IMG/VR virus record: IMGVR_UViG_3300047095_000752
Coordinates: 124,001-188,000 of that record
Reading direction: 5' to 3' (one strand)
Length of the DNA: 64,000 nt
In this document: piece after piece, positions 1-55,648 of the stretch
How the letters are laid out: each line of letters starts with the position of its first letter
Numbering within the stretch: the stretch's first letter is position 1
Made by a program: the position numbers and the translations under genes
The notes under the pieces: model-generated
What the model was told of the DNA's origin: nothing
What the model saw: the letters and a program-made list of their open reading frames with translations, nothing else
The model's database searches: none

Positions 1-499
1 CGTCAATCTGAATTGGTCTATATTCGGGTGAAATTACAGGTAATTTATTTATAAAGAAAGTTCGATCATCAACTGCTTTGTAAAGTACATCGATAATCTT
101 ATTTCGGTCTCCACCCTCTTCACCGGTCGAAAAACGTATCTTATGGATGTTGTTTACAAATGCAGTCATACCATTAATATCACCCATATCATCTTCGACT
201 AAATTATTATTCGAATCCAGTGAAAATATGGCTTCCCCAGATAATAAGTCGGGGATGCGTCTAAAGATACGCTTCTCTAAAATATCATATAGAAATGGGT
301 GAACAACATTACAGTTTAGATCAATCCAAGAATAATTAGAACGTCTCTCTTTAGATCCTTCTACCCCGAAGATAGTTTCTGAATATAAACCTTGAGGGTG
401 GAAATTCATAGACTTATCGAAGTAGATTTGATGTGATGTTATAGCTTCTAGTGCCTTCTTTTCTTTTAAAAAGACATCTACGTGAATTGGTTCGATCAT
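1..499 (-). CDS. Phage multisubunit RNA polymerase beta'-like subunit, N-terminal part (runs off the left edge; absent from the ORF track)
   Basis: Hand translation from ATG at 499 (RBS GAGG): MIEPIHVDVF...HPQGLYSETIFGVEGSKERRSNYSWIDLNCNVVHP...NKLPVISPEYRPIQID. This matches RpoC motifs GLFxExIFG, RRxxxGxIxL...H and LPVxPPxxRP. No stop before the edge. Confidence 0.85.
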   Translation of the reverse strand, partial: MIEPIHVDVFLKEKKALEAITSHQIYFDKSMNFHPQGLYSETIFGVEGSKERRSNYSWIDLNCNVVHPFLYDILEKRIFRRIPDLLSGEAIFSLDSNNNLVEDDMGDINGMTAFVNNIHKIRFSTGEEGGDRNKIIDVLYKAVDDRTFFINKLPVISPEYRPIQID

Positions 500-6059: not shown

Positions 6060-6071
6060 AACCATTATGAT

Positions 6072-6094: not shown

Positions 6095-6106
6095 TATACA
6101 AAAAAA

Positions 6107-6640
6107 TTAGCGGCGAGTTACAGATTTTTGTCTCATATTATTGTTGACCATCGATTTAAGTAAAGCCATATTGAAGAAAGCGCCGGGGCAAGCCATGTCT
6201 TTGAAAAATGAAACCTCGGAGTGGGTTACGATATTCTTTTCCGAAATTCGAAAGGCTTTCATCATAGGGATTATAACTTTGATTGCCATGACATTATATA
6301 ATTTTCGATCTGGTTGATCGGCATTCATATTCCCCATAACGGCTATATGGATCCCTTCTTGGTGCATATCTTCCATGTCGAGGAAGGGGGCTTTAGTGAG
6401 GAGTGGTGCACAAACTATCGGATGAAACTCGTCTCCAACTTTTTCTATAACGAAATTGTATGGTAAATACATTCGATCTAATTCGTAAATTGTCTTAGCC
6501 AGTTTATTTACTTGAAATGATGGACGATCAAATACAACTGCCGCATCCGTAGGCTTAAGATCTTCTGTATGATGGATTATGATCCAATTTGGCCAAGATC
6601 TCGCATATTTATACATGTCTTGTTTTAATGACATTGCCAT
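6107..6640 (-). CDS. N-acetylmuramoyl-L-alanine amidase (Amidase_2, T7 lysozyme-like)
   Basis: IIIHHT...YNFVI...IAVMGN...THSEV...CPG zinc-ligand pattern; TAATG coupling to the upstream gene. Confidence 0.8.
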   Translation of the reverse strand: MAMSLKQDMYKYARSWPNWIIIHHTEDLKPTDAAVVFDRPSFQVNKLAKTIYELDRMYLPYNFVIEKVGDEFHPIVCAPLLTKAPFLDMEDMHQEGIHIAVMGNMNADQPDRKLYNVMAIKVIIPMMKAFRISEKNIVTHSEVSFFKDMACPGAFFNMALLKSMVNNNMRQKSVTRR

Positions 6641-7578
6641 TATCGTTCTCCCGCTGGTTTCGCTGCTTGTGCTGCCTTTGCTGGGCAACTTAGTGGGGTC
6701 TGGATGAATGAACTCTGCCCCTTGATTAATACTTTACCGCCAGTTTTGATCCCGGCTGCTTGCTTTCCTTCAATAAATACAGATGCGGAACTGGATTTCA
6801 TATTCATGGATCCTTTTGACTCAAGTGCAGCCAACCCATCTGTTTTTATATCGACTCCACCTTTAGCTTTAACTTGGAATTTACCTTCCGTCTCAAACAT
6901 TATGTCGCCTTTAAATTTACATTCTAATGTTTGTTTTTCTATATCAAAATTAATATAATCGCCCTTATGTGTTTTTATAATTAATTTTTCACTACCTTCG
7001 CGCTCGTCGATTAGGATTACAGTCTGGTTTCCATCAACCTCGTACACAGATGCCGCGTTACCTGAAGGTCCTTCTGAGTCGTCCAGCTTTCTCTTCTTAC
7101 CTGTTATCTCTACTCTCTGTTGATCCGGGGAGTCGCAAACTACAACGGATCTACCCATCCCAGATGTAATTACAGTATAAACTTTATGGGGTTCGTCTAC
7201 ATTTCGGTTAACTGCAGGTAGTGGAACCGCTTTCTCTTGCCAAGGACCTAAATAGAAGGCTCTTTCCATGTCACTATCTTCAAATTGGACTCTCACATAT
7301 GAATTCAATAATGGGATAAAAACATTAGCTGCAGCAAAGTGTGAGGAACTTTCAGGGTCGTCTTCATTGTAGCCGCCCAGTCCCATATTTGAAGGATATG
7401 CTAAAATACCATCTTTGAATTCGTCCAGTTCTTCGTGGATTTCCTTGGACATTAATTCTGGTATGTAAACTCTAACAGCGCCGTATTTATTCTTTTCCCC
7501 GTCATCATCTACATCGACTTCCGTAACGCGGGCGCGGTAGATCTTATCATACTTCTTTTCTTGCTTGGCTGGAGGCAT
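6640..7578 (-). CDS. Baseplate hub / spike protein, T4 gp5- or VgrG-like (OB fold + beta-helix)
   Basis: YRARV...GAVRVYIP...FIPLLNSYVRVQFEDSD...FYLG, followed by beta-strand repeats. Confidence 0.8.
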   Translation of the reverse strand: MPPAKQEKKYDKIYRARVTEVDVDDDGEKNKYGAVRVYIPELMSKEIHEELDEFKDGILAYPSNMGLGGYNEDDPESSSHFAAANVFIPLLNSYVRVQFEDSDMERAFYLGPWQEKAVPLPAVNRNVDEPHKVYTVITSGMGRSVVVCDSPDQQRVEITGKKRKLDDSEGPSGNAASVYEVDGNQTVILIDEREGSEKLIIKTHKGDYINFDIEKQTLECKFKGDIMFETEGKFQVKAKGGVDIKTDGLAALESKGSMNMKSSSASVFIEGKQAAGIKTGGKVLIKGQSSFIQTPLSCPAKAAQAAKPAGER

Positions 7579-7587: not shown

Positions 7588-7962
7588 TTAATCGTCTTCA
7601 TGTTTTTGAGCAGCTATAACTCTATTTTGTGCAACTTGAATATTTCTTAAATATCCAAAACATACTCTACGTTCGTCAGGATCCATTATATCATCACAGC
7701 CGTGCTTGATCCATCTCTTACGCTTAACCTTATCTACAAGCTCTCTAGCAAGCATCCCACCCCCTGCAATAGCCGCTCCCATGGCAGCATACTTAATCCC
7801 AGTATTTAATTTACTTGAAACTTCTCTTGTAGCTTCTTTTGGATCTAAGTACCCAGCTTCCGCTAAATATTTATATTCTGCTACAGTTAAATTAGACATG
7901 GCTTCTTGGATTAAAGCATCTAATCTTTCTTGTAGTTTCAATAATCTTTGTATGTCATTCAT
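7588..7962 (-). CDS. Leader-bearing small virion-type protein, class A
   Basis: MNDIQRLL..ERLDALIQEA..LTVAEY..LAEAG leader; GAAIAGGG segment; GCxxIxDPxERxxC. Confidence 0.7.
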   Translation of the reverse strand: MNDIQRLLKLQERLDALIQEAMSNLTVAEYKYLAEAGYLDPKEATREVSSKLNTGIKYAAMGAAIAGGGMLARELVDKVKRKRWIKHGCDDIMDPDERRVCFGYLRNIQVAQNRVIAAQKHEDD

Positions 7963-7977
7963 AATACAATTTCCTTA

Positions 7978-8247
7978 CTATCTTTTTAATAATGGAGGTC
8001 CGGTTGGTAACTGATTTTTAAGTCTTTGTTGATGTCTTTCTTCTACTGCTTTTTGTTTCTTTTCAATCTCTTTTTCAAATTGATATATAATTTGTTTACG
8101 TCTTAAATCTCTATCTCGAATAGCTTTACGTGTAGCAGCAATTGAAGCACCCGCCATAAGACCAGCACCAATTCCCGCTGCAGCTTTAAGTCCGGCTTTA
8201 ACTCCGGATTCAATTAATTTATTTTTAGCATTAGTTAAAATACTCAT
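7978..8247 (-). CDS. Leader-bearing small protein, class B
   Basis: MSILTN...LIE leader; Ala/Gly hydrophobic segment; basic tail. Confidence 0.7.
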   Translation of the reverse strand: MSILTNAKNKLIESGVKAGLKAAAGIGAGLMAGASIAATRKAIRDRDLRRKQIIYQFEKEIEKKQKAVEERHQQRLKNQLPTGPPLLKR

Positions 8248-8251
8248 TTAA

Positions 8252-8668
8252 TTAACCCTTATTCAGATATGAATCGACCATATCCTTACCACGATTTGCT
8301 AAGCCTTTAGCACGGTCGACCACATCTTGTGTAAAGGTTGTCTTTCTTGTACTCTTCATCCAGTTTATACACTGTTTATATTCCGGTGTATTTCTTCCAT
8401 ATTTTCTATGGCATGTATTGTATATACCGCTTAGGTCGGCATTTCGATTCATTAACTTTGTATCTTGTCTATCATCATACCTCCCCTTAGCCCACCCACC
8501 AGCCATTAAAGTAGGTACGACGGCTGCAGTGCCCTTCCAGAATTTTTTAGTTTTTGCTAAATCTATACCAGATCTGACCAGTTGTCCGGCGTGTCTACCA
8601 ATAGTTCCGGCTAGACCTTCATTTAAAAATTCTTCTAAATTTTTATTCGAATTATTTAAAATACTCAT
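8252..8668 (-). CDS. Leader-bearing small protein, class B
   Basis: MSILNNS...FLNE; CHRKYG...YKQC. Confidence 0.7.
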   Translation of the reverse strand: MSILNNSNKNLEEFLNEGLAGTIGRHAGQLVRSGIDLAKTKKFWKGTAAVVPTLMAGGWAKGRYDDRQDTKLMNRNADLSGIYNTCHRKYGRNTPEYKQCINWMKSTRKTTFTQDVVDRAKGLANRGKDMVDSYLNKG

Positions 8669-8688
8669 ATTATCAATACCTTTATTTA

Positions 8689-9216
8689 TTACTTATTGTC
8701 ATAATACATAAAAGAGCTATCACTACCTAACGCAGCCGCCCCTACATTTAGAGCGCCATTTATAGTGGCTAATCTAGCGAACTTTTTTAGTTGTTGATTT
8801 CTGTACTGTCTCTTCGCTTCTTCCTTCTCTGCTTTCAGTCTTGCTAATTCTTTATCCTTAGCACCATTTCGGATTTTATCTTCAACTCTGTCGATCTTTC
8901 TCTTTAAATCTCCAGATCCTTTTTGAACATAGGCGGCGGCAACACATCGGTTATATGATCTAGTTCCCTTTTCACCAACTGCTAAACAGTCAATAATTGG
9001 ATTTCTAATTTTTCCATCTTTACCACCGGCTTTGTTTAGGCGCATTTTATCACCAATTTTATTTCTAGCTACATTACCAGCACCAAGTCCGGTAATGACA
9101 CCTGCTGTAAGTGCTTTATTATTTTTAACTGCGTTTAAAGCCGTACCAATTGATTTACTTAATACACTTTCTTTTAACAATTGTAGTTCATGATTAGATT
9201 TATTCAAAATGCTCAT
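8689..9216 (-). CDS. Leader-bearing small protein, class B
   Basis: MSILNKS...LLKE; C-x13-C motif. Confidence 0.7.
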   Translation of the reverse strand: MSILNKSNHELQLLKESVLSKSIGTALNAVKNNKALTAGVITGLGAGNVARNKIGDKMRLNKAGGKDGKIRNPIIDCLAVGEKGTRSYNRCVAAAYVQKGSGDLKRKIDRVEDKIRNGAKDKELARLKAEKEEAKRQYRNQQLKKFARLATINGALNVGAAALGSDSSFMYYDNK

Positions 9217-9229
9217 AATATAGATCCCT

Positions 9230-9622
9230 TTATTTTTCGATTAAATTATTTATTTTTGATTTCAACTGATCTTTATACGCCAGACTTTTATTATAAGCAA
9301 ATCTACCTCGATCTGTTACGTCATTTGCGATATTGTATTTTGGGTTCAGTTTAAATTTATCAACACACGATTTGTACTTTGGTGTACCAGATCCATATCT
9401 ATTGGAACATGCTGTGTATATACCATTTGACTTAGCGTCCTTATTTAGTTTTCTTGTTTTTCGGGTTAAAATATGATTTGCAAGGATAGCGTCGATAGAT
9501 ATAGCTGATGCTAAATTTTTTCGTCTGTATTTATAGAAGGTTGCTGCGGCTTTTCTAGCCATAGATCCTTTAGATTCATAAAAGAAATTTAATTTTTTTA
9601 TAGATTCAGTTAAAATACTCAT
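9230..9622 (-). CDS. Leader-bearing small protein, class B
   Basis: MSILTES...FFYE; CSNRYG...YKSC. Confidence 0.7.
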   Translation of the reverse strand: MSILTESIKKLNFFYESKGSMARKAAATFYKYRRKNLASAISIDAILANHILTRKTRKLNKDAKSNGIYTACSNRYGSGTPKYKSCVDKFKLNPKYNIANDVTDRGRFAYNKSLAYKDQLKSKINNLIEK

Positions 9623-10425
9623 TAGTCTAAACTCGGTTTATATAGCTTTTCATTTATTTTATCGCCTATTTTGTCTTTAAGGCTTCGTGCTCGATTTGCA
9701 ATTGAATTTGGATCTATACCATATCTCTTATTTAATTTATCGACACATTTTGAATGTGATTTGCTTCCATCTTTATACACTTTAGAGCAAGCTACTTTTG
9801 GGTCTTTACCGCCAAATCTTACTGTTAATGAGTTCATAGCCGCATTTGAGGCAAGACCTGCACCGGCAGCCCCACCCGTGAACACTGCTGTATCTCTTAA
9901 TTCCTTTATACCTCGATTGTTCTTATATTTTTTGGCAGCATTTATATGTTTATTGAATTGAATGTCATCCATGGTACCTCGGAGTCCATCTCTCAGACTA
10001 CCTATGTCTTTGTCTACTAAATCACGAAACGCCTGACGATCTGTCTTATTTTTAGGATCTAATTTTTTTAACTTTTCTATTTTTCCGATGGCCATGTCGC
10101 GGTCATATTTCATATCAAAATTTTTGACTTGTTCTGGGATTTTAGCTTTTCTTGAAACAACATTATAAAAATTAATTTTATTATTATATCGGCGAGAGGC
10201 ACGACTGGCACGCTTAACTTTTGCAGCATCTATTGCGACTTTATTAAATTTGGAGGAAAGAAAGCTATTAATTCTATTCTTGGCTCGGTTTAGAGTCAGA
10301 GGTTTTTTATTCTTCTTTACTATATTCCCTGCTGCCTTAGCTGCGTCAATAACATCAGTATAATCTACATCAACTAGGTTCGCCAATTGCTTACCTACAG
10401 CCGTTTTAAAAGTTTCATTAATCAT
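9622..10425 (-). CDS. Basic protein of the same family (minimal MINE leader)
   Basis: GGAAGAGLA segment; CSKVYK...HSKC. Confidence 0.65.
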   Translation of the reverse strand: MINETFKTAVGKQLANLVDVDYTDVIDAAKAAGNIVKKNKKPLTLNRAKNRINSFLSSKFNKVAIDAAKVKRASRASRRYNNKINFYNVVSRKAKIPEQVKNFDMKYDRDMAIGKIEKLKKLDPKNKTDRQAFRDLVDKDIGSLRDGLRGTMDDIQFNKHINAAKKYKNNRGIKELRDTAVFTGGAAGAGLASNAAMNSLTVRFGGKDPKVACSKVYKDGSKSHSKCVDKLNKRYGIDPNSIANRARSLKDKIGDKINEKLYKPSLD

Positions 10426-10481
10426 TTTATTTTCCTTTTAGTAATTATATTCTATGATAAGATATATATTAATATTTAAGT

Positions 10482-11129
10482 CTACTGTATTCCTAATCTT
10501 TCTTTAAGCTTTTGTAGTCTGGTCTTCGGCGCTGGCTTTGGTTGGAGAGCACGATTTACGGCATATCCACCACCAGCGGCGGCTGCACCACCGGCTGCTA
10601 TACCAGCACCAATCTTAGCTTGTCTACGCGCTTGTGCTACGGCGGACTGTGATGCTGTAAGTGCGGGAGCGGCTTCGTCGGCAGCTTTTAAAGATAGAGC
10701 GGATCGTGCGTCTCTGGACTTATTTTTCCAATTACGTTTTGCCCACGGTCCAACTACTTCAGCATAAGTATTGGCACCACTGGCTTCACGTGAAGCCTTT
10801 TTAATATCTTTAAGCCTCATACCACCCGGCTTGGTACCGAATTGTTTTATCTTTTCACCTTTTTCAATTGCCGCCTTTAGGGTACTTTGATTCTTTTTAT
10901 CACCCATCACATTAACGCCGAATCGTCTTACAGCCTGTCCGGCGCGAGTACCAACAGCAGCCTTACCAAGTCCTACTATAGTATCATATCCGGTTTTAAA
11001 CTTATTTTCAGTTAAAATACCAGCTTCATGTAACTGTACAAATTCACTTACGGTCAATTCGTTCGTGGCTTCTTCAATTAAACTTGCTAACTGTTCTCTC
11101 ATTTCTAACATTTCTAATAATTCGTTCAT
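10482..11129 (-). CDS. Leader-bearing small protein, class A
   Basis: MNELLEMLE...LTVSEF..LHEAGILTE; IGAGIAAGGAAAAGGG. Confidence 0.75.
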   Translation of the reverse strand: MNELLEMLEMREQLASLIEEATNELTVSEFVQLHEAGILTENKFKTGYDTIVGLGKAAVGTRAGQAVRRFGVNVMGDKKNQSTLKAAIEKGEKIKQFGTKPGGMRLKDIKKASREASGANTYAEVVGPWAKRNWKNKSRDARSALSLKAADEAAPALTASQSAVAQARRQAKIGAGIAAGGAAAAGGGYAVNRALQPKPAPKTRLQKLKERLGIQ

Positions 11130-11134
11130 TTTAT

Positions 11135-12010
11135 TTAACCTTTCTTAGCATTTTGTAATGCGATAAATACCATCTTCTCGTAAAGACCTTTATTGATCTT
11201 TCTAAAGAATGATGAAAAAACGGAACTACCCGACACTGATGATGCGACCAATGTTGCAAATAATCTCGATCCATCTTCATAAGCTGGTAGACTTGATAAC
11301 CCAGAGCTATTAATAATAGTCTGTGAAAATAAATTTTCGGAAATAGGAATAATATTATTTTTTCTAAGTGCTGTTAAAAATCCAATCATAGATGATAAAT
11401 CAAAATTCAAATTCAATTCTGATGCTGATTGTGCATAATATCTATTTGCAAGTTTATTTATAACACCTTGATTTATATCTCCGCCCATAATACCAGAATG
11501 AACATACAATCCAATTAACACTTGTAGGTTAGGAATCAAATATTTATACGAGCCTTGAAGACCATGTTTCTTAGAATAAAATTTCATGAATGCGGATATG
11601 TAGAAATTTGCGATATGAATGTCAATATCTTTTTCGAATGGCTTACGTTTAATATAAGATTGTAAAGTTATAGCGTAAAGGAACATGGAATAAATATCAG
11701 GAGAACTATAATCAGATACATACTGACTAGGTAATACAGATAGATTTACAACAGGTATAAAGTCACGAGTTACAAAGCCGGGTAGAGGATATTCGGGCAT
11801 TCTAACTACAAGGCATTTATCCATATTTTCGATCACATATGAACCACCACCATGTGCTCTAGCATAACCTTTGGTTAATACTTTAATATGGTGGTTATCA
11901 TCAGCATCTACTTCGAATGCCTTGATTGTATTAGCGGCTACCGGTGATATGTTATATACTTGGTGTCCACTTTTATCTTTGATTAATTCAAAAGATTCTT
12001 TAATTCTCAT
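11135..12010 (-). CDS. Hypothetical protein (virion region)
   Basis: 291-aa ORF with RBS. Confidence 0.65.
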   Translation of the reverse strand: MRIKESFELIKDKSGHQVYNISPVAANTIKAFEVDADDNHHIKVLTKGYARAHGGGSYVIENMDKCLVVRMPEYPLPGFVTRDFIPVVNLSVLPSQYVSDYSSPDIYSMFLYAITLQSYIKRKPFEKDIDIHIANFYISAFMKFYSKKHGLQGSYKYLIPNLQVLIGLYVHSGIMGGDINQGVINKLANRYYAQSASELNLNFDLSSMIGFLTALRKNNIIPISENLFSQTIINSSGLSSLPAYEDGSRLFATLVASSVSGSSVFSSFFRKINKGLYEKMVFIALQNAKKG

Positions 12011-12070
12011 TTTATATGTTCCTTAGATCAAATTAATTCATAATAGAATTTTATAATATTACTAAATTAT

Positions 12071-12562
12071 TTATTCCCAATAGTCATCGGGAACGTTCTT
12101 TTTTGGTACTCTTCTCGACATGTGTCTATTTATATCATCTTGAAAACTACTGTATATATCCAACTTCTTTCGGGTGCTTCTGGGTTTCGTACTACGGGCA
12201 CCGTGTATCATATTATCATCAAGATTTTTATGAATTAGTCCTTGAATTTTTTCTTTTCTTAGATGTGCTGGTGTAGATCTTAATTCATCTTTCATATCTC
12301 TAAATTTATTGGCGGACATTCCCCACCGTTTATATGTTTTTACTACATCCTCAGCTTGCTCTTCCGGTGTCGTAAAGAAATTCGCAGCCAAACGCCGACT
12401 CGTCGCTTGAGGGGTACGTTTTAGCTGTTCCCGGTTTGAGGACTTTGCAAATTTAATAAGATCTGATGGCGTTCCAGATTTTGATGCCTTCTTTAAAATC
12501 TTTTTTAATATACCTTCTTTAAATAATTGAAGGGTATTTTCGGATTCTGTTAATATACTCAT
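12071..12562 (-). CDS. Leader-bearing basic protein, class B
   Basis: MSILTES...LFKE. Confidence 0.7.
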   Translation of the reverse strand: MSILTESENTLQLFKEGILKKILKKASKSGTPSDLIKFAKSSNREQLKRTPQATSRRLAANFFTTPEEQAEDVVKTYKRWGMSANKFRDMKDELRSTPAHLRKEKIQGLIHKNLDDNMIHGARSTKPRSTRKKLDIYSSFQDDINRHMSRRVPKKNVPDDYWE

Positions 12563-12566
12563 TATA

Positions 12567-13220
12567 CTATCCTTTAGATGTAATAGATTTAATCTTAGCT
12601 TTAATTCTGTTAATTGGCTTTGCAGCTTCTGCGGCTTTAGCCATCATTTGTTGGTTGCGTTCATTACGATTTTGATTGGACTTCTTAACGCCAGCCCCTA
12701 CAACTGTACCACCAACTGCTGTCGCTCCCGCGTGTGTAGCTAATGTTTTTCTAGATTGATTTACATTCTTTTTAATTCTACGTAGTTTACCGGCCGCGAT
12801 ATATTTATCGGCTTCAGGTCCGGACATCTGAGAAAAATGTTTAGTTTCACTCTGGTCAATACCAGCAGCCTTCATGCTACGATCTGCTTTAGCGATTTTA
12901 CGCTTCAACTGGGCTTGCTTGAGTTTATCTCCACCCATTACATTTTTTGCGAATTTGGTGGTGACTCTTTTTGTATCTTTACCAAACCCAATAGCTTTTT
13001 GACCTGTCTTTGAGGCGGCAACTTTTTGACCAAAACTAGAACCAGCAATACGCTTGCTTAATTTTGATAAAGCTCCAATACCATTCTTAATATTAAGTTC
13101 GTTTAGTACACCACTTTCGGTTAACATTTGAACTTCATTCATAGTAAGATTATCAACGGATTCTTCAATCAATTGATCTAATTTCTTCTTCATTTCTAAC
13201 ATTTCTAATAAGTCGTTCAT
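12567..13220 (-). CDS. Leader-bearing small protein, class A
   Basis: MNDLLEMLE...LTMNEV..LTESGVLNE; shares NVMGxxK with 10482..11129. Confidence 0.75.
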   Translation of the reverse strand: MNDLLEMLEMKKKLDQLIEESVDNLTMNEVQMLTESGVLNELNIKNGIGALSKLSKRIAGSSFGQKVAASKTGQKAIGFGKDTKRVTTKFAKNVMGGDKLKQAQLKRKIAKADRSMKAAGIDQSETKHFSQMSGPEADKYIAAGKLRRIKKNVNQSRKTLATHAGATAVGGTVVGAGVKKSNQNRNERNQQMMAKAAEAAKPINRIKAKIKSITSKG

Positions 13221-13265
13221 AGTATAAATTCTCCTTGTTATTTATTATATATTTGTCGAAACTTT

Positions 13266-13367
13266 TTATAGAGCGAATGAATTAACAAACGCAATAATTA
13301 AAGTTACTACATCATTAATAAAACTATTTAACAGTACTTCTAATTGGCTTAATAATAAATCAAACAT
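13266..13367 (-). CDS. 33-aa hydrophobic peptide (below the ORF track cut-off)
   Basis: MFDLLLSQLEVLLNSFINDVVTLIIAFVNSFAL*; AAGGA RBS. Confidence 0.55.
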   Translation of the reverse strand: MFDLLLSQLEVLLNSFINDVVTLIIAFVNSFAL

Positions 13368-13533
13368 GTTTTTTATCCTTTTTGGGTTGGGTTTGGTTGA
13401 GTTTAAGTGAGTATTTTATATTTAATCTTATAAACCTAATAAATTATTACGTTTATATGACATTTTAGATTTGCGACTTCCTTCTTGTTCGTATTTGATA
13501 TATGTTACTTTGTCGATGGTACCTCCCCGTCAG

Positions 13534-14073
13534 CTAGACCTGTGGTACGCCGGGTTCCAGCGGTGCTCCGTTCCCATCTTCCGGCGCACCTTCCGACGGT
13601 TCGTTGTACTGACTTTCGTCAATCGCTTGGTTAAGTTCACCTGTGGTGTACCGCATCTTGAGTCCATCGATGATGTAGCGCAACGACTTAGGCGTCGGTT
13701 TCACCACCGGATCCACGGCGGGGGGTGCGGTATAATATAATCCATTGATCTCCCACTGCTGCTTGCTCGGATTCCAGACTTCCTCTTCCCTCCGACCATA
13801 GAACCAGCGGGTCGGTATACCCCACTTGCCACCACTGGATGATCGGTATGCGCCATCCCAGTACCAGACGATGAGAGGACCATTTTTATATTCTGCCCAA
13901 ATCGGCCACTTTTTCTCGGCTAGACTATCGGGTCTGTCTGGAGTGTTCGTTCGCCAGTCGTAACCACCCACATTGAGGTAAGGAGCGACTGTTCCATATT
14001 GGTCCTGAGCGCCGCCGACGCTATATCTTAATCGTGTTATCATTTTATTCCTTCTACACCGATGGAACACCAT
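13534..14073 (-). CDS. Trp/Gly-rich hypothetical protein, high GC (start may be MITR)
   Basis: ORF with visibly elevated GC. Confidence 0.6.
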   Translation of the reverse strand: MVFHRCRRNKMITRLRYSVGGAQDQYGTVAPYLNVGGYDWRTNTPDRPDSLAEKKWPIWAEYKNGPLIVWYWDGAYRSSSGGKWGIPTRWFYGRREEEVWNPSKQQWEINGLYYTAPPAVDPVVKPTPKSLRYIIDGLKMRYTTGELNQAIDESQYNEPSEGAPEDGNGAPLEPGVPQV

Positions 14074-14099
14074 CTTATATTAAATATATACTATTATAA

Positions 14100-14438
14100 T
14101 TAATATTTGCCGCGCCGGGTCGATGGAGATGATAACGTATCACCTTTCGGTCCAGCCCACAAATCTTTACAAGCCCAATATGCGGCAGAAAATCTATCTT
14201 TCTGCTGATCACATTTATGTCTTGCTCTAAATGACTTTCTTGCTACGTCACTGTAGTTGTGACCATATCCCGTAGCGCCATAATGAATTAACTTCTCACG
14301 ACCACCTTCACAGACCTTGACCATTTTCTTCTTACCGGGTCTGGTTGAATTCATTGGTTTATTACAGGGCATTTTACTTTTATCGCTATTTTCTTTTAAT
14401 ATTGATTCTAAAAATAATTTACAGTCGCGTATTAACAT
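14100..14438 (-). CDS. Small basic protein with KSFRARHxC...AAYW motif (widespread in large viruses)
   Basis: PGKKKMV...IHYG..GY...RKSFRARHKC...SAAYWAC. Confidence 0.6.
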   Translation of the reverse strand: MLIRDCKLFLESILKENSDKSKMPCNKPMNSTRPGKKKMVKVCEGGREKLIHYGATGYGHNYSDVARKSFRARHKCDQQKDRFSAAYWACKDLWAGPKGDTLSSPSTRRGKY

Positions 14439-14449
14439 TTTTATATTCC

Positions 14450-15325
14450 TTACACCGAAGGTATTCCATCAGCGATTCGGTATGTGATTGATACCGGATA
14501 AGTTATTGTAAGTCTAGATCCAACCCTGAGTTGTGTCGCCATATTTGATAGTAATGATGAATTTTCAGAATTTGCTATAATATCAGATGTCTTCCAACTA
14601 ATTCTTTGATGCTTAGCTTGACTATTATAAACTAAAGTATAGTCGTAATTGTATTTTTGTTGAATTGAGAAATTATTAAGTTTAATTGATATACCAGACG
14701 GATTTGAAGGTTCTCTTAGTAAGTCTACGTATTTATTGGCTAGATCGGTAGATGTTAATATTTTAATTTCAGTCTTCTCGGTATTGTATATCCCGAGTAT
14801 CTGGGGTTGACCGAATCCTAACAATTGTTTCTCAGCGTCCAGTCTTTCCATTTCCATTTTATCTAATGGGTATTTTTTATAATATTGATTTATTTTAGTA
14901 TCTGATAATACAGTTTCTTTTAGTGGGATTATATTTTTATCAACTTGTCTATCACTAAATAATTGAAATATTGATGTATACGGCGGCACTAAAATAGTTT
15001 CAAAATCAACAAAATCTTCTCTCGAACTAACATTGTTGACATATAAGATTAAAGGCCAATATATGGTAGTATTATAATAATCAAAACTAACATAGTCTGG
15101 TCTCATATACCAACGTGAACGAAACGCAACTTCTTCACTTGAGTTTAGTAAGATGAAGAAGTTGCGATCAAAAGTTAATATATCAAAAGCTGGGAATTTA
15201 ACTTCAATATTGTTTTCAGTATCAACATCTATATATCTATTTCTAAAATTATCAATATCTGTTGCTAATTTTGAATTTCTAGATGCTTCTGTTCTAATTG
15301 AAGATTCTATTGGTTTAAGGGACAT
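14450..15325 (-). CDS. Baseplate wedge protein, gp53/LysM-like
   Basis: RPDYVSFDYYNTTIYWPLILYVNN motif. Confidence 0.65.
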   Translation of the reverse strand: MSLKPIESSIRTEASRNSKLATDIDNFRNRYIDVDTENNIEVKFPAFDILTFDRNFFILLNSSEEVAFRSRWYMRPDYVSFDYYNTTIYWPLILYVNNVSSREDFVDFETILVPPYTSIFQLFSDRQVDKNIIPLKETVLSDTKINQYYKKYPLDKMEMERLDAEKQLLGFGQPQILGIYNTEKTEIKILTSTDLANKYVDLLREPSNPSGISIKLNNFSIQQKYNYDYTLVYNSQAKHQRISWKTSDIIANSENSSLLSNMATQLRVGSRLTITYPVSITYRIADGIPSV

Positions 15326-15356
15326 TATACGTTACCTTATATATTATACTTCCTTA

Positions 15357-15671
15357 TTATACGTTGGAAATTTTTGACTTACAATAATTAAGCATTTTAG
15401 GATCATTCTTGTATCTAAAATTGCACAACGCCAATTTACCTTTATTTACTATACTTGATATCCCCGTAGGTTGTACATTTAACATTTTTGTAGTTTTAAC
15501 CGGAGTTGCTTTTGGGTTGTATGGCATTTTTGTATATTTTGGAGTTGCTTCGCCTCGTTTACCTAACATATTAGTTATAAAGGATTCTGATAAACCTAAT
15601 TTATTTATTTTCTTGTTTATTAGATTGTCTAATTCTTGCTTAGCTTCTAATAATTCTAATATATCATTCAT
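15357..15671 (-). CDS. Leader-bearing small protein, class A (short)
   Basis: MNDILELLEAKQELD...LSE; CNFRYK...NYC. Confidence 0.7.
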   Translation of the reverse strand: MNDILELLEAKQELDNLINKKINKLGLSESFITNMLGKRGEATPKYTKMPYNPKATPVKTTKMLNVQPTGISSIVNKGKLALCNFRYKNDPKMLNYCKSKISNV

Positions 15672-15691
15672 TTATAGGATCCTTTAAGTTT

Positions 15692-16234
15692 CTAACTATA
15701 TATAATATCATCGACTTTAGTTTTGATTTTTTCTCTAATTTTTTGTAGTTCTGGTTTATTTGCTTCAGCTTTTGCGGCGGCAGAATCTCTTCTTTTATTT
15801 TGAATTGATTTTCCTGCAATGGCTGCGGGCACGGAAGATGTACCGATTACCTTGGCTGCTCGTTCGAGTCCAATATCTTTACGAACCGCTTTTTTATTCC
15901 AATTTAACATAGCACGCATATAATCTAGATTTTTCATCCCCTCAAACCCCTCTTCGGGATCTAAGTCTATTCCATACCCATCTAAAGTTTTGACTCTTTT
16001 ATTTAATTTTTGAGCTAATTCAGCGGGTTTTGGTTTTAGAAATCCGGTTGAAACTCCAATTTTACGAATTAATTTTTTAGTATTAATTATATTATCTTTA
16101 GTTATCTTAATTTCGGTTAAAATACCATTTTCTTGTAAATAATTAAATTCGTTTACCGTAAGATCCCGAACAGCTTCTTGAATTAATTCATCGAGTTTTT
16201 CTTTGGTTTGCAACATTTCTAATAGATCATTCAT
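15692..16234 (-). CDS. Leader-bearing small protein, class A
   Basis: MNDLLEMLQ...LTVNEF..LQENGILTE. Confidence 0.75.
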   Translation of the reverse strand: MNDLLEMLQTKEKLDELIQEAVRDLTVNEFNYLQENGILTEIKITKDNIINTKKLIRKIGVSTGFLKPKPAELAQKLNKRVKTLDGYGIDLDPEEGFEGMKNLDYMRAMLNWNKKAVRKDIGLERAAKVIGTSSVPAAIAGKSIQNKRRDSAAAKAEANKPELQKIREKIKTKVDDIIYS

Positions 16235-16315
16235 ATTATAGTCCTTTAAATTCTAAACTAAAGTGTATGATAACACATTTTATAAATATTAGTTACGTTA
16301 AAGTTTTTTATGAAA

Positions 16316-16909
16316 TTACATTCTATCTTTTACAATATCTTTTAGCTTGGTTAATTTTCCGGCTTTTGCGGCAGCATAAAGTTTTTGAGCGCATGCCTTT
16401 ACTTCTTCAGGCTTTGAATATCTAGATTTACACGCAGTTACAGCATTACCGGTTTCTTTGTACACAGATAGCATACTACGATTTTTAACCTTATTGTTTG
16501 CGAATTGACCGGTCTTATACGCGGCGGTACCAGCCGCTGCAGTAGTTGCTAGTCTAACGGGGCGTTCAGTTGCTTTAACTATGCCCTTCTGATTTTTATA
16601 TGCATTTCTAAACATATCTTTCATTACGGCAGGCGCAATTACCTTTCCGAGTGCGTCCTTTTGTGAACGCGCCGCCTGTTTAGCGACTCTATTTACCATT
16701 TGAACTCGTTCTGCTGGAGTCATTTTTAAAATTCCAGTTGCAGTCCCAACACGCCGTAAAATTTTTGATAAAGGTTTCGTCGCAGCTTCATTCAGTACGC
16801 CAGATTCTTGAAGTGTCTGGAATTCACCTACAGTAAGTTCACCTACAGCTTCTTGGATCAGATTGTCAAGATCCTGCTGCATCTCTAAAAGTTCGATTAA
16901 TTCATTCAT
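16316..16909 (-). CDS. Leader-bearing small protein, class A
   Basis: MNELIELLE...LTVGEF..LQESGVLNE; CKSRY...KAC. Confidence 0.75.
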   Translation of the reverse strand: MNELIELLEMQQDLDNLIQEAVGELTVGEFQTLQESGVLNEAATKPLSKILRRVGTATGILKMTPAERVQMVNRVAKQAARSQKDALGKVIAPAVMKDMFRNAYKNQKGIVKATERPVRLATTAAAGTAAYKTGQFANNKVKNRSMLSVYKETGNAVTACKSRYSKPEEVKACAQKLYAAAKAGKLTKLKDIVKDRM

Positions 16910-16978
16910 TGTAATATCCTTTCAATGTTATTAGAATTAAATGGTTTACGTAAAATTCTTTACATATATTTGTCCGGT

Positions 16979-17515
16979 TTACCCTATATATCTATTAGCT
17001 TTATCTTTGGCTTTATCAAATATAGATTTATTTTTTAAAATCTCAGCTTCTTTTTTCTTTTTCAATTGATCGTGCTTAAGTTTACCATAAACTCCAAGAG
17101 TCACACCAACCCCAGCCGTTGTATAAGGGCGAGCTTTCATATTCTTGGGTAAATCTTTTATATTTTTCTTACCAGTTTTAATAGAATCTATAACTTCAGC
17201 TTTAATATCACCTTTAAATTTAGCTATATCAGCGGCATCTTTACCTTTTAATAAGGTATGTCTTTTGTCAATAGCATCATCAATGGCGTTAATAACAAAT
17301 CGGGTGGCTTTAGTTCCGGTCTGTAATACCTTCTTAGATACATTTCGGTTCGCGGATTTAGCATATGTACCGGCGAGCTTAAGTCCGGTCATTCCAAACT
17401 TAGCTAAATTTTCATTTAATATATTGAATTCATTGACAGTTAAATTGTTGATATGATTCTCGATTAACATATCAACTTCTTGTTTTGCTTCTAATAATTC
17501 TAATAAGTTATTCAT
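16979..17515 (-). CDS. Leader-bearing small protein, class A (start 17515)
   Basis: MNNLLELLEAKQE...LTVNEF..LNE; AAGGA RBS. Confidence 0.75.
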   Translation of the reverse strand: MNNLLELLEAKQEVDMLIENHINNLTVNEFNILNENLAKFGMTGLKLAGTYAKSANRNVSKKVLQTGTKATRFVINAIDDAIDKRHTLLKGKDAADIAKFKGDIKAEVIDSIKTGKKNIKDLPKNMKARPYTTAGVGVTLGVYGKLKHDQLKKKKEAEILKNKSIFDKAKDKANRYIG

Positions 17516-17531
17516 TATGTTATAATCCTTT

Positions 17532-18062
17532 TTATATATGGACATGTTTCCATGATTTATTTAATATTATATTTGATATACTTCTTGTATTTACATTAAA
17601 CATTTTTGAAAGATCAGACTGATTAAAAATTTGGTTTTTACCGTAAAATCTAATTTTCTTAACTTGTATTTCAGTTAATTTAGATCTGGCGTTATTTTCA
17701 CCTTTACTTGTTCTTAATTCATTGTCATATGCGTGTTGTATATTTTCGCTTCTAGTGCACCACTCTAAATTGTCTATATGGTTATTTTCTTTATTACCAT
17801 CTATATGATTAACTTCATCATAATAACTTTTCACATCCAATTTAAATGTAAGCATTACTAGTCGGTGATTTGTATATGATTTTCCTTTTTTATTTTTACT
17901 TAAATCTACTTGATGATATCCGTATCGATTTTTAAATGATTTCAGTATAAGTTCTCTATTTCTTTGAAAACTTTTAACTCTACCTAAATTGCTTATTTGG
18001 TAAAGCCCTTCATATTCTGGTATATCTTTCCAAACTTCTGTAGTCAATGTAACTAACTCCAT
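17532..18062 (-). CDS. NUMOD4-HNH homing endonuclease
   Basis: EVWKDIPEYEGLYQISNLGRVKS (NUMOD4); HRLV...VNHIDGNKENN..DNLEWCT.SEN. Confidence 0.92.
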   Translation of the reverse strand: MELVTLTTEVWKDIPEYEGLYQISNLGRVKSFQRNRELILKSFKNRYGYHQVDLSKNKKGKSYTNHRLVMLTFKLDVKSYYDEVNHIDGNKENNHIDNLEWCTRSENIQHAYDNELRTSKGENNARSKLTEIQVKKIRFYGKNQIFNQSDLSKMFNVNTRSISNIILNKSWKHVHI

Positions 18063-18758
18063 TTACAGTTCAGGTTTATCCGAACCTTCTTTTTTCCAAC
18101 TGTATTTAAATTTATCATAACCGCAGTTAGACCAGTTGATCTTTAGCTTTTCCAATATAGGATCCAAATCGTCCGCTTCTAAATAATGACCATATGTTTG
18201 AACGAAGTATCCCATATCACCTTGACATAATTCAATGGGTAAGTTAATTGCCGCATTGTGGTACATCTCGTGGATCGACTTCAGCAGAACAATAAAGGGA
18301 ACTCTCATCTTATAGTGCATTTCCATCACTTCATCGATGATATCAATTGAAGAGAATTCTTTCTTACTTATGACGTGTTTCATTATAACCGCTTTAACTA
18401 TAACGTACAATGCGGCAGGGTGGTGGTGGATATCGCTCTTAGCGTTAACGTGACTCTCCCCCGTGATCTGGCATTCCGTCATTTCCATCACATTACGAAT
18501 GTAGTCCGTCCACTCCCCATACTCCGGGCACATCCGGATCATACTTTCACATTTCTTTATAAACTTATTTAATTCTTTATCGTCTGAAATTTCATCCCGT
18601 TTATATCTTAATGTATATTCGGAATTCTCGGAATGAAGTTTATTATTATCTTCGTCATAAGTTACGATATTAACTTCCGTTTTAACGGTGGATGCTTCTT
18701 CGAATAATGAATTTATCCGAGCATCAATATCATCGTCTGCTACAGCCATGAAACCCAT
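18063..18758 (-). CDS. Hypothetical protein with HNH-like motif
   Basis: CQITG...DIHHHP...L..S.HEMYH. Confidence 0.5.
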   Translation of the reverse strand: MGFMAVADDDIDARINSLFEEASTVKTEVNIVTYDEDNNKLHSENSEYTLRYKRDEISDDKELNKFIKKCESMIRMCPEYGEWTDYIRNVMEMTECQITGESHVNAKSDIHHHPAALYVIVKAVIMKHVISKKEFSSIDIIDEVMEMHYKMRVPFIVLLKSIHEMYHNAAINLPIELCQGDMGYFVQTYGHYLEADDLDPILEKLKINWSNCGYDKFKYSWKKEGSDKPEL

Positions 18759-18765
18759 CTGATAC

Positions 18766-18996
18766 CTACCTTTTCTTCTTTCTTAACTTTTCTTTCATTT
18801 TGTACATATACATGTCGCATTTAAAGCGTTCATTTGGATCGTCGATGCTAGTACAACCATTCTTAATCCAACCGGCTCTCTTCTTACTACGAGTGAGATA
18901 TTCAATACCACCAATAGCAGATATAGTGGCAAGACCAATACTAACTAGGGCTTGATCGCTAATTTCTTTTAAAAATTGTTTATGTAAATAATTCAT
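18766..18996 (-). CDS. Leader-bearing small protein, class C
   Basis: MNYLHK..LKE; hydrophobic segment; WIKNGCTSIDDPNERFKC, shared with 7588..7962. Confidence 0.65.
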   Translation of the reverse strand: MNYLHKQFLKEISDQALVSIGLATISAIGGIEYLTRSKKRAGWIKNGCTSIDDPNERFKCDMYMYKMKEKLRKKKR

Positions 18997-19002
18997 AATT
19001 CG

Positions 19003-19788
19003 TTATCCAGTAATCGAATCGATTGTTTGTCTTATCTTAGAAGTCTTATACTTAGCATATAATCTATTTTGACACTTTTTAATGTCTTCTGGTGAATTAT
19101 ATGATTGTTTACATGCCTTTACAGCATTTTGTAGTTTCTCATATGTGTATTCACTTTGTTTCGTCTTTAGTGCTTTGTTTGCGGTGATTGCCGTAGCTCC
19201 GGCACCGGTTGCTAATCCACCACTAACAACATTGTCAATCATATCAATTTTTCGTAATTTCTTTGCACGTTCGGCTGCGGTGCCACGTAAATTATTAAGC
19301 TTATCACCTACACCCTTTGTAGATGTATTAAAATTATTTACAATCGTATCCATACCTGCCTGACGGCGTTTTAATAGATCTTCTGCGTCTTTAGCCTTAC
19401 TTAATATGGCAGCTTCGGTCTCTTTCCACTTGGCTTTTTGCTGAGCGGATGCATTAGGCTTGCGAGCAGGGGACTTTGCCCATCTACGTTCAAGTTCGTC
19501 TTGTACGGCTTTAATATCCTGTTGTGGACCTACGCTGCGCTTCTGAATAGCGTCGAGTGCGCTTTCAACCTTAGCTTTTTTAGCAACTTGAGTTTTACGA
19601 ATACCAATAGAGGGCTTGAGTAAATCACCATATCTATCTTTAAGTTTAGTAAAGTCGATGTGTCCCTTTTTCATAGATGCTAGTTTATTTGGTACGTATC
19701 TTATTACTTTACCTAAATTTTCTAATGTCTTAGATTTAGCACCCTCTTCGAGGATAGCTTCAATTAACGCTTTGTGTTGGTAATTCAT
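19003..19788 (-). CDS. Leader-bearing basic protein, class C
   Basis: MNYQHK...ILEE; GGLATGAGA; CKQSY...KKC. Confidence 0.7.
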   Translation of the reverse strand: MNYQHKALIEAILEEGAKSKTLENLGKVIRYVPNKLASMKKGHIDFTKLKDRYGDLLKPSIGIRKTQVAKKAKVESALDAIQKRSVGPQQDIKAVQDELERRWAKSPARKPNASAQQKAKWKETEAAILSKAKDAEDLLKRRQAGMDTIVNNFNTSTKGVGDKLNNLRGTAAERAKKLRKIDMIDNVVSGGLATGAGATAITANKALKTKQSEYTYEKLQNAVKACKQSYNSPEDIKKCQNRLYAKYKTSKIRQTIDSITG

Positions 19789-19791
19789 ATC

Positions 19792-55239: not shown

Positions 55240-55647
55240 ATGAACTCTGTGTGTAAGAAAGTTATATACGAAAAATATATTGTGAATGAATTTAGTCTGA
55301 CCGGTGCTATGCAAGGCGCAGAAAATTTCATTTCGAAGAATAGTAATGTCATCGGTCTTGGAATGCCAGCCGTTGGTGCGGGACTCTCCATGGCAATTTC
55401 GGCAAAAGACGCTATACAGCGTAAGATGATGGAACACAAGTGGAAGCGTAAAGGATGTGACCAAGAGATCAACCCTCAGCTAAAACAGCAATGCGAAGTT
55501 CGCCAAAGAAATATGCTTATAGCATCAATCGGAAAAGAAAAGGGTCGCTGCAGAGGAGCCAAAGATCCACAAGCATGTATGGCTCAAATTGATCAAAGAA
55601 TCAGTACCCTACGTGGACAGAACGCTCAAGAGTACTCAGGAGAATAA
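55240..55647 (+). CDS. Leader-bearing small protein (outlier of the array family)
   Basis: ..IVNE leader; GLGMPAVGAGL; GC...C and C..AKDPQAC; GGACAAAT upstream. Confidence 0.65.
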   Translation: MNSVCKKVIYEKYIVNEFSLTGAMQGAENFISKNSNVIGLGMPAVGAGLSMAISAKDAIQRKMMEHKWKRKGCDQEINPQLKQQCEVRQRNMLIASIGKEKGRCRGAKDPQACMAQIDQRISTLRGQNAQEYSGE

Positions 55648-55648
55648 T

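What the first reader, a model, noticed from the sequence alone, without database searches (positions are those of the whole stretch)
7588..19788. Array of ~15 'leader + hypervariable cationic cargo' genes: a candidate capsid-packaged, protease-matured effector arsenal
Seen: about 15 small genes here, plus two at 55240-56008, share conserved N-terminal leaders that end in Glu. Class A is MN(D/E)LLE(M/L)L...L..LI.E....LT(V/M).E...L.E.G.L.E (7962, 11129, 13220, 15671, 16234, 16909, 17515). Class B is MSIL(T/N)..x...L...xE (8247, 8668, 9216, 9622, 12562). Class C is MNYxHK...LxE (18996, 19788). After the leader the bodies diverge strongly, but most keep a Lys/Arg/Ala-rich region, a Gly/Ala hydrophobic segment and a basic tail. 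Known: T4 internal proteins carry a Glu-terminated capsid-targeting sequence removed by the prohead protease gp21, the IP locus is hypervariable, and IPI* inhibits the GmrSD restriction enzyme; the phiKZ head protease also cuts after Glu. Inference: this is a much expanded, modular 'address tag + cargo' system that loads many membrane- or DNA-active peptides into the head for injection (anti-defence, membrane channel or DNA condensation). The leaders might be portable packaging tags.
Basis: partly seen in the sequence, partly recalled or inferred. Interest (0 to 1): 0.9.

Follow-up and report, generated by a model that had tools for sequence, protein, structure and literature searches.

The report
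Leader-tagged basic protein array, jumbo phage
An uncultured 245-kb jumbo phage has about 17 small, very basic, helical proteins that share three kinds of short acidic N-terminal leader on reshuffled bodies, most likely a larger version of phage T4's tag system for loading injected proteins into the virus particle, though packaging and cleavage are not shown.

Summary
On the minus strand of 7588-19788 there are 7 class A genes (41-aa acidic leader), 5 class B (about 16 aa) and 2 class C (about 11-15 aa). Leader HMMs hit only these genes, always at residue 1. The family also includes a leaderless relative (9622-10425), a 112-aa protein with a B/C-like leader, two genes at 55.2-56.0 kb, and one at about 229 kb of the source contig. 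Bodies have pI about 10 and net charge up to +31, and class A leaders carry up to -10. The bodies are related to each other: they share a Gly/Ala segment, a basic linker, a Cys-x12-14-Cys helical hairpin and a K-rich tail. Leaders and bodies are reshuffled, and one strain-specific gene is flanked by 60-nt leader-coding repeats. The array lies among virion genes: a gp53-like wedge protein, a gp5/gpV-type spike, an amidase and virion-RNAP subunits. The AR9 group, the nearest relatives found, uses a T4 gp21-type head protease. Class B/C leaders fit the T4 capsid-targeting pattern (Φ-x-Glu). A virion-targeting tag system is therefore the best reading (about 0.45). Packaging and cleavage are untested, and this phage's own protease was not found in the 130 kb searched. 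The bodies show no motif avoidance, and only 2-3 of 17 look membrane-spanning. I rate it a new variant of a known kind.

The parts
19003..19788 (-). Class C member, 261 aa. Leader M-N-Y-Q-H-K-A-L-I-E|A, Gly/Ala segment at 187-203, Cys226/Cys239.
18766..18996 (-). Class C member, 76 aa, the minimal unit: an 11-aa leader ending L-K-E, a hydrophobic Gly/Ala helix, a basic linker and a Cys48...Cys60 helix-loop-helix.
16979..17515 (-). Class A member, 178 aa. The ORF can extend to 17545.
16316..16909 (-). Class A member, 197 aa. The AF2 model is all-helical, with a confident C-terminal Cys160/Cys173 domain.
15692..16234 (-). Class A member, 180 aa.
15357..15671 (-). Class A member, 104 aa, Cys83/Cys97.
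14100..14438 (-). 112-aa protein with a class B/C-like 16-aa leader (…L-F-L-E-S-I-L-K-E|N) on a domain that matches phrog_220 'minor head protein and DNA pilot'.
12567..13220 (-). Class A member, 217 aa (leader charge -7, body +31).
12071..12562 (-). Class B member, 163 aa.
10482..11129 (-). Class A member, 215 aa (leader charge -9, body +24). Gly/Ala run at 173-191.
9622..10425 (-). Leaderless relative, 267 aa, with the shared Gly/Ala + Cys213/Cys227 module.
9230..9622 (-). Class B member, 130 aa, Cys72/Cys86.
8689..9216 (-). Class B member, 175 aa, Cys77/Cys91.
8252..8668 (-). Class B member, 138 aa. Its leader-coding 60 nt is the repeat that flanks the extra gene in strain L003.
7978..8247 (-). 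Class B member, 89 aa.
7588..7962 (-). Class A member, 124 aa. Its body is homologous to that of the class C 76-aa protein.
55240..55647 (+). Dispersed relative, 135 aa, with a TM-like Gly/Ala segment and two Cys pairs.
55649..56008 (+). Dispersed relative, 119 aa as called, with a class C-like start (M-L-H-H-H-K-Q-R-I-S-E) and two Cys pairs.
14450..15325 (-). Context gene inside the array: a 291-aa protein with a T4 gp53-type baseplate wedge segment.
6640..7578 (-). Context gene: the central tail spike (gp5/gpV/VgrG type).
6107..6640 (-). Context gene: N-acetylmuramoyl-L-alanine amidase directly after the spike.
18063..18758 (-). Context gene inside the array: an acidic 231-aa protein with an HNH-like H-H-x-P…H…H-x-x-x-H site, found only in AR9-group jumbo phages. 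It is not a peptidase.
17532..18062 (-). Context gene inside the array: an HNH/NUMOD4 homing endonuclease.
1..499 (-). Context gene: the N-terminal part of the virion-type RNA polymerase beta' subunit (cut by the window edge).

Best explanation
The array is a lineage-specific, recombination-shuffled family of small, all-helical, strongly basic proteins. Their acidic N-terminal leaders come in three interchangeable classes and act as virion-targeting sequences of the T4 'capsid targeting sequence' kind. In this reading the leader docks the precursor to the assembling particle, most likely the prohead core. A gp21-family head protease then removes the leader after a hydrophobic-x-Glu site, and the basic mature proteins stay with the packaged DNA and are ejected into the host. 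Shown here: the leader classes, their restriction to these genes, purifying selection on the leader peptide, leader/body reshuffling, gain and loss of genes by recombination between leader-coding repeats, the basic helical bodies with a shared Cys-pair hairpin domain, and the virion-gene neighbourhood. Inferred: packaging, cleavage, the cleavage site, the compartment, and what the proteins do after ejection. DNA charge neutralisation or condensation is the simplest guess from 21% Lys+Arg.
For: Leader HMMs hit only these genes, always at residue 1. A leader-only profile scanned against 1.84 billion proteins found 21 hits. 18 of them are small proteins (104-217 aa) with the leader at the N-terminus and very different bodies, and conservation stops at ...G-[IV]-L-x-E near residue 41. 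Class A leaders have pS 0.73 against pN 0.35. In strain L003 a class B leader (81% identical to the one at 8668) sits on a body that resembles a class A body, and that 541-bp indel is flanked by about 60-nt leader-coding direct repeats. Class A leaders carry net charge -6 to -10 and bodies +14 to +31. Class C (M-N-Y-Q-H-K-A-L-I-E|A) matches the length and pattern of the T4 ipII/ipIII CTS, and the T4 internal proteins are likewise small and basic; ipII and ipIII carry Φ-x-E only in the leader (PMC9026906). Multiple cleavage motifs inside long propeptides, and expanded head paralog families, are documented in SPN3US and phiKZ (PMC5694885; PMC10052503). Context: a gp53-like wedge gene sits inside the array. 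The spike's homologues carry PF04717. An amidase follows the spike. Both RNAP beta' pieces best match AR9's virion RNAP subunits. The 112-aa 'minor head protein/DNA pilot' domain protein carries a B/C-like leader in two phages. AR9 has a T4 gp21-type protease and a PF07068 capsid protein.
Against: There is no proteomic or experimental evidence, because the phage is known only from metagenomes. Its own protease and capsid genes were not found in record positions 94,784-235,055. Bodies are not depleted in [LIF]-x-E (9 observed against 12.8 expected, not significant), and [LIF]-x-K is enriched in the bodies in the same way, so Φ-x-E in the leaders may simply reflect acidic amphipathic helices. 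No Pfam, PHROG, NCBIfam, BLAST or Foldseek link to any known internal protein was found. AR9 itself has no such family. A distant relative keeps the spike-amidase-vRNAP synteny without the array. The neighbours are baseplate genes, not head genes.
Confidence: 0.45

Rival explanations
1. The proteins are tail or baseplate cargo, or pilot proteins. The leaders dock them to the baseplate hub, spike or tube lumen rather than to the prohead core. They leave first on contraction and act at the envelope, with the Gly/Ala segments inserting into membrane and the Cys pair oxidising outside the cytoplasm. The leader need not be cleaved.
For: The array is interleaved with a gp53-like wedge gene and ends at the central spike and amidase. 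Glycine-zipper-like Gly/Ala segments and conserved Cys pairs are present. SPN3US gp47 is a precedent for an ejection protein with a membrane segment after propeptide removal.
Against: Only 2-3 of 17 segments reach a transmembrane threshold, and AF2 models them as low-confidence or disordered. A distant relative has the same spike module without any array. T4's own internal-protein genes also lie near gene 5 and gene e, so position does not discriminate between compartments.
Confidence: 0.2
2. The proteins are not in the virion. They are a lineage-specific expansion of small DNA- or RNA-binding (histone-like or regulatory) proteins made in the infected cell. The acidic N-terminal helix would be an uncleaved oligomerisation or self-masking module for the basic body.
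For: Bodies are 21% Lys+Arg and all-helical. The acidic leader opposite a basic body suggests intramolecular masking. A 35-copy expansion of a small zinc-ribbon protein in phage G is a precedent (PMC7824862). No protease was found and there is no motif avoidance. Replication genes flank the array on the upstream side.
Against: It does not explain three unrelated, interchangeable leader classes on related bodies. It does not explain the sharp end of conservation at a Glu, the T4-CTS-like short leaders, or the leader on a 'head/pilot' domain protein.
Confidence: 0.2
3. The proteins are membrane proteins of the infected cell, such as holin/antiholin-like lysis regulators or superinfection-exclusion factors, encoded next to the amidase.
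For: They are small, with one weakly hydrophobic Gly/Ala segment and a highly charged C-terminus, and they lie next to a cell-wall amidase.
Against: 15 of 17 fail a classical transmembrane threshold. The segments lie far from the N-terminus, behind long, highly basic stretches. There is no signal peptide. About 17 paralogs is out of scale for lysis control.
Confidence: 0.07
4. The proteins are exported bacteriocin-like precursors whose class A leader is a double-glycine-type export signal.
For: The class A leader has the same spacing of hydrophobic and acidic residues (L...E-F..L) as double-glycine leaders, and the precursors are cationic with GxxxG-like segments. The comparison with double-glycine leaders is from my own knowledge.
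Against: There is no Gly-Gly/Gly-Ala/Gly-Ser at the predicted site (Glu occupies -2). Bodies of 60-220 aa are far too long. No C39-peptidase ABC transporter was seen in any scanned gene.
Confidence: 0.03

Closest known systems
Phage T4 internal proteins (IPI, IPII, IPIII, Alt) with their capsid targeting sequence, cleaved by the gp21 prohead protease
   Same: Both are small basic proteins with a short shared N-terminal leader that ends in hydrophobic-x-Glu followed by a small residue. The leader is shared by otherwise divergent bodies. The locus varies between strains. The genes lie outside the head module, near lysis and baseplate genes.
   Different: There is no sequence homology. This system has about 17 members instead of 3-4, and three leader classes, one of them 41 aa long, strongly acidic and carrying two or three candidate sites. 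The bodies share a Cys-pair helical hairpin domain that T4's internal proteins lack (0 Cys in the T4 proteins). Neither the protease nor packaging has been shown.
Head paralog families of phiKZ-like giant phages (phiKZ gp93-95/162/163 and SPN3US gp53/54 = pfam12699; SPN3US paralog family B, up to 20 members), with long propeptides
   Same: Both are expanded families of internal or ejected proteins in a jumbo phage that packages a virion RNA polymerase. N-terminal propeptides are shared between paralogs, carry several Glu-ending motifs, and the copy number varies between phages.
   Different: There is no match to PF12699 or to any PHROG. The S/A/G-x-E motif of those proteases is absent from the leaders (0 observed against 6.4 expected). 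The proteins here are much smaller and more basic.
MuF-anchored polymorphic toxins and polyvalent injected proteins of phages
   Same: Both follow the logic of a conserved N-terminal virion-loading module joined to variable C-terminal cargo. The 112-aa domain in the array occurs in a PHROG built from such large 'minor head protein/DNA pilot' proteins.
   Different: There is no MuF domain. The cargos are separate small genes rather than one multidomain protein, and no enzymatic or toxin domain is recognisable.
N-terminal packaging signals of extracellular contractile injection system (PVC-type) payloads
   Same: Both are short N-terminal tags on diverse payload genes clustered beside a contractile-tail or spike module (from my own knowledge).
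   Different: Those tags are not conserved in sequence and are not known to be cleaved. These are genes of a true phage.

Membership tests
T4-type CTS-bearing internal proteins | N-terminal leader of about 10-20 aa ending in (L/I)-x-E followed by a small residue | tested here: met
   Class B (13-17 aa) and class C (11-15 aa) end in [LF]-x-E followed by S/G/A/I. Class A is 41 aa long, with [VML]-x-E29 invariant, L-x-E35 in 6 of 7 and L-x-E41 in 4 of 7. This is a match of pattern only and cannot be given a significance value.
T4-type CTS-bearing internal proteins | Sequence homology to known internal proteins | tested here: not met
   No PHROG, Pfam or NCBIfam hit, no tblastn hit in 50,697 phage records, and no Foldseek match.
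T4-type CTS-bearing internal proteins | A gp21-family (S77) prohead protease encoded by the same genome | tested here: inconclusive
   None was detected in record positions 94,784-235,055 (130 of 245 kb), and 115 kb was never read. The related AR9 has one (g114) together with a PF07068 capsid protein.
T4-type CTS-bearing internal proteins | Present in virions with the leader removed | not testable with these tools
   The phage is uncultured and known only from metagenomes, and no proteome is available.
T4-type CTS-bearing internal proteins | Small basic proteins in a strain-variable locus that share the leader | tested here: met
   pI 9.4-10.7 for all but one member (7.8). Strain L003 has two extra genes, one of them bounded by leader-coding repeats. 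The L007 orthologs range from 24 to 77% identity.
phiKZ-type inner-body / internal head proteins (PF12699) | Match to the PF12699 domain | tested here: not met
   Pfam scan at E up to 0.1 gave only noise.
phiKZ-type inner-body / internal head proteins (PF12699) | S/A/G-x-E cleavage motif at the propeptide boundary | tested here: not met
   0 [SAG]-x-E in 385 leader residues against 6.4 expected.
Double-glycine-leader bacteriocin precursors | Gly-Gly/Gly-Ala/Gly-Ser at positions -2/-1 and a C39-peptidase exporter | tested here: not met
   Glu occupies position -2 in the only register that fits. No such transporter was found among the scanned window genes.
Holins / small phage membrane proteins | At least one bona fide transmembrane helix | tested here: not met
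   A Kyte-Doolittle 19-residue score of at least 1.6 with no charged residue occurs in 2 of 17, with one more borderline. AF2 gives pLDDT below 50 for the segment.
MuF polymorphic toxins | N-terminal MuF (SPP1 gp7-like) domain | tested here: not met
   No Pfam or PHROG match in any member.

The most novel reading that the evidence does not exclude
The three leader classes are interchangeable address tags of a cassette system. Homologous recombination between leader-coding repeats swaps, adds and deletes cargo genes, so a jumbo phage can load a large, fast-changing set of small cationic proteins into its particle. The strongly acidic 41-aa class A leader would also serve as a built-in charge mask that keeps the cargo inert until a Glu-specific protease removes it inside the particle. 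The tags would then be portable packaging signals for this uncultured phage clade.
Probability: 0.3. Interest if true: 0.75.

Novelty: new variant of a known kind. Interest (0 to 1): 0.58.

Why it matters
If the leaders are packaging tags, this would be the largest and most modular example of the T4 tag principle, found in a phage lineage far from T4. It would show three tag types, a long acidic pro-piece, and a visible recombination mechanism for exchanging cargo. That would give a sequence-based way to find injected proteins in uncultured jumbo phages, where most virion contents are unannotated. It would also give candidate portable tags for loading foreign proteins into large capsids. The cargo family itself, a basic helical protein with a Cys-stapled hairpin domain, is undescribed, and its role (DNA condensation, host takeover or envelope crossing) is open.

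Tried and rejected
- **Zincin peptidase inside the array.** The 231-aa protein (18063-18758) contains H-E-M-Y-H, but the Glu is E/D/Q in its homologues. The invariant pattern H-H-x-P…H…H-x-x-x-H fits an HNH-like site, so I rejected the peptidase idea.
- **Motif avoidance in the bodies.** Not significant.
- **Homologues in AR9.** Leader, family and C-module HMMs against 229 of the 251 kb of AR9 gave nothing.
- **Fold matches.** Foldseek of the AF2 model against BFVD and PDB gave nothing below E = 1.
- **Family libraries.** Pfam, PHROGs and NCBIfam gave nothing on the family proteins.
- **Finding this phage's capsid and protease.** An exact-protein walk failed or returned no DNA. The AR9 capsid search listed no protein from the 245,225-bp contig. 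The capsid-profile scan of metagenome contigs gave 71 loci, none from this contig. Walking through IMG/VR covered record positions 94,784-235,055 without a recognisable protease or capsid gene.
- **Promoters.** The sigma-70 consensus scan found no more than chance, and I did not trust AT-rich intergenic motifs.
- **Host.** No relative was found in the GTDB genomes.
- **Double-glycine leader reading.** Rejected because there is no Gly-Gly.
- **Second indel in L003.** It has only short microhomology, not leader repeats.

Full report
**What is there**

The region 7588-19788 is a tightly packed minus-strand gene block. Every gene has a good Shine-Dalgarno site, and most intergenic gaps are 3-20 nt.
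- Seven genes open with a 41-residue leader of consensus MNDLLELLEMKxxLDxLIxEAxxxLTVxEFxxLxExGxLxE (class A).
- Five open with MSIL(T/N)xSxxxLxxFxE (class B).
- Two open with MNYxHK…(L/I)xE (class C).

Leader-only HMMs scanned against all six-frame ORFs of the window hit exactly these genes, always at the N-terminus. A gap of many orders of magnitude separates them from the next hit.

The class A leader is an old, selected peptide. Between paralogs the synonymous sites are saturated (mean pS 0.73) while pN is 0.35.

**Anatomy of the proteins**

- Class A leaders carry net charge -6 to -10, except two at -3 and -1. Bodies carry +14 to +31, and pI is about 10 throughout.
- Bodies are 14% Lys, 7% Arg and 12% Ala. 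Leaders are 16% Glu and 18% Leu.
- The bodies are not unrelated. 11 of 17 share an uncharged Gly/Ala segment, a 15-25 residue basic linker and a Cys-x12-14-Cys motif, followed by a Lys-rich amphipathic tail. This module crosses leader classes: 16909~19788, 7962~18996~55240/55649, and 8668~9622~10425.
- AlphaFold2 models are all-helical. The Cys-pair region of the 197-aa member is a confident small domain (pLDDT 86-95), the leader helices are moderate, and the Gly/Ala segment falls below 50.
- The 76-aa minimal member is a helix-loop-helix with one Cys on each side of the loop.
- No fold match was found in BFVD or PDB.
- Only 2-3 of 17 Gly/Ala segments reach a classical transmembrane threshold.

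**Modularity and dynamics**

The close strain L003 has two extra genes.
- One has a leader 81% identical to that of the gene at 8668, but a body that resembles a class A member's body. At the DNA level, this 541-bp insertion is flanked by about 60-nt direct repeats, which are the leader-coding sequences themselves. This is the signature of homologous recombination between leaders.
- The second indel has only microhomology.

In the more divergent relative L007, flanking genes are 74-89% identical while family members range from 24 to 77%. One ortholog pair keeps the leader (about 80%) and the Cys domain, but its middle has diverged to about 20%.

A leader-only profile scanned against 1.84 billion representative proteins found only 21 hits. 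18 of them are small proteins (104-217 aa) with the leader at the N-terminus. Their bodies differ widely, and conservation stops at a Glu near residue 41. The other three were one short and two very long proteins with internal or repeated matches.

The family is confined to a narrow, uncultured clade. A distant relative with the same spike-amidase-vRNAP synteny lacks the array.

**The phage and the neighbourhood**

The window is positions 124,001-188,000 of a 245,225-bp contig. The phage has:
- a split family-B DNA polymerase with HNH insertions and a clamp loader;
- split multisubunit RNA polymerase genes.

The 231-aa gene inside the array has homologues only in AR9/PBS1-type jumbo phages. 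Both RNAP beta' pieces just downstream best match AR9's virion RNAP subunits.

Other genes in or next to the array:
- A 291-aa gene inside the array carries a T4 gp53-type wedge segment.
- The 312-aa gene at the array's end is the central spike. Its homologues carry PF04717 and DUF2345.
- An amidase follows the spike.
- A 112-aa gene inside the array matches a domain of the 'minor head protein and DNA pilot' family (E = 1e-19). Its N-terminus is the best non-family match to class C leaders among the 98 window genes. In a second phage the same protein starts with a class B-like 16-mer ending Q-L-L-K-E.

**Comparison with known systems**

In T4, a 10-residue N-terminal capsid targeting sequence is shared by otherwise divergent basic internal proteins. 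Residues 4 and 7 target the protein, and residues 8 and 10 direct cleavage by gp21 (PMC9026906). I fetched the T4 proteins from the database. ipII and ipIII begin with a 10-mer ending F-I-A-E|A and carry the hydrophobic-x-Glu motif only there, and all three proteins have pI 8.9-9.5. The class C leader M-N-Y-Q-H-K-A-L-I-E|A has the same length and pattern.

The T4 ip genes also lie near gene e and gene 5, so a baseplate- or lysis-side location is not evidence against a head destination.

Giant phages of the phiKZ/SPN3US type have expanded head paralog families with long propeptides that contain several cleavage motifs (PMC5694885; PMC10052503). AR9 has a T4 gp21-type protease and a PF07068 capsid protein.

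**What weakens the interpretation**

- I could not find this phage's own protease or capsid gene. Exact-protein walking, a capsid-profile scan and a walk through IMG/VR covered record positions 94,784-235,055. The only new virion gene was a homologue of AR9 g112 at about 208.6 kb.
- Bodies are not significantly depleted in [LIF]-x-E (9 observed against 12.8 expected).
- The leaders are enriched in [LIF]-x-E (42 against 16.5), but the bodies are enriched in [LIF]-x-K in the same way. Amphipathic-helix periodicity therefore explains part of the signal.
- The phiKZ-type [SAG]-x-E motif is absent from the leaders.
- AR9 has no homologue of the family.
- A candidate array-encoded peptidase turned out to be an HNH-like protein.

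**Verdict**

The best-supported reading is a virion-targeting tag system of the T4 kind, greatly expanded and reshuffled by recombination at the tags (confidence about 0.45).

| Rival reading | Confidence |
|---|---|
| Tail or baseplate loading of pilot proteins | 0.2 |
| Non-virion nucleic-acid-binding expansion with an uncleaved acidic helix | 0.2 |
| Cell-membrane proteins | 0.07 |
| Exported bacteriocin-like precursors | 0.03 |

It is a new variant of a known kind, not a new category. The new elements are the three leader classes, including a long acidic one, the visible leader-mediated cassette exchange, and an undescribed Cys-stapled helical cargo domain.

Noticed in passing
L100:15202-15711 (source contig about 229.2 kb, outside the window): Another dispersed family member: 164 aa, pI 9.0. 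It has Cys pairs at 72/84 and 103/112, the same 12- and 9-residue spacing as the two genes at 55.2-56.0 kb, and a class B-like start (M-N-Q-L-N-K-N-I-K-Q-L-R-E-D-I-I-E).
   Followed up: partly
window 18063-18758 (-): An acidic 231-aa protein with invariant H-H-x-P…H…H-x-x-x-H, an HNH-like metal site. It is conserved only in AR9/PBS1/PALS_2/phiR1-37-type jumbo phages, each with two copies. It lies next to virion genes in AR9 and phiR1-37. Function unknown.
   Followed up: partly
window 3977-4053, 6060-6106, 28225-28291, 40931-41200, 43720-43804: A recurrent intergenic motif, about TTCAATA(A/T)TTAATATATATAAT, in either orientation. It is often beside HNH homing-endonuclease genes and could be a phage promoter or a homing-related site.
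   Followed up: no
window 28623-35206 (-): The family-B DNA polymerase is split into a 780-aa gene and a 258-aa gene. Two HNH endonuclease genes and four small genes lie among them, as in AR9. Rfam found no group I intron.
   Followed up: partly
window 60256-61035 (-): A Thy1 (ThyX) thymidylate synthase gene is present. [quoted passage not shown]
   Followed up: no
window 7588-7962 (-) and 9622-10425 (-): Possible relics of leader swapping. Downstream of its class A leader, the 124-aa protein has A-T-R-E-V-S-S-K, which aligns with the class C leader end F-L-K-E-I-S-D-Q. The 267-aa protein has an internal stretch (residues about 43-58) that aligns with class B leaders but has lost the Glu.
   Followed up: no
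window 13221-14073: This is the largest gap in the array (313 nt), followed by a 179-aa ORF. The ORF's region carries many overlapping ORFs in other frames and looks compositionally different from its neighbours. A homologous fragment precedes a class A gene in L014.
   Followed up: no
window 58586-60187 (-); L006:13656-15350; L018:8055-9983 and 18809-20635: There are several copies of a DUF7487 protein that matches AR9's 'Hef-like homing endonuclease'. One sits beside the virion RNAP genes, and in the distant relative one sits where the array would be.
   Followed up: no
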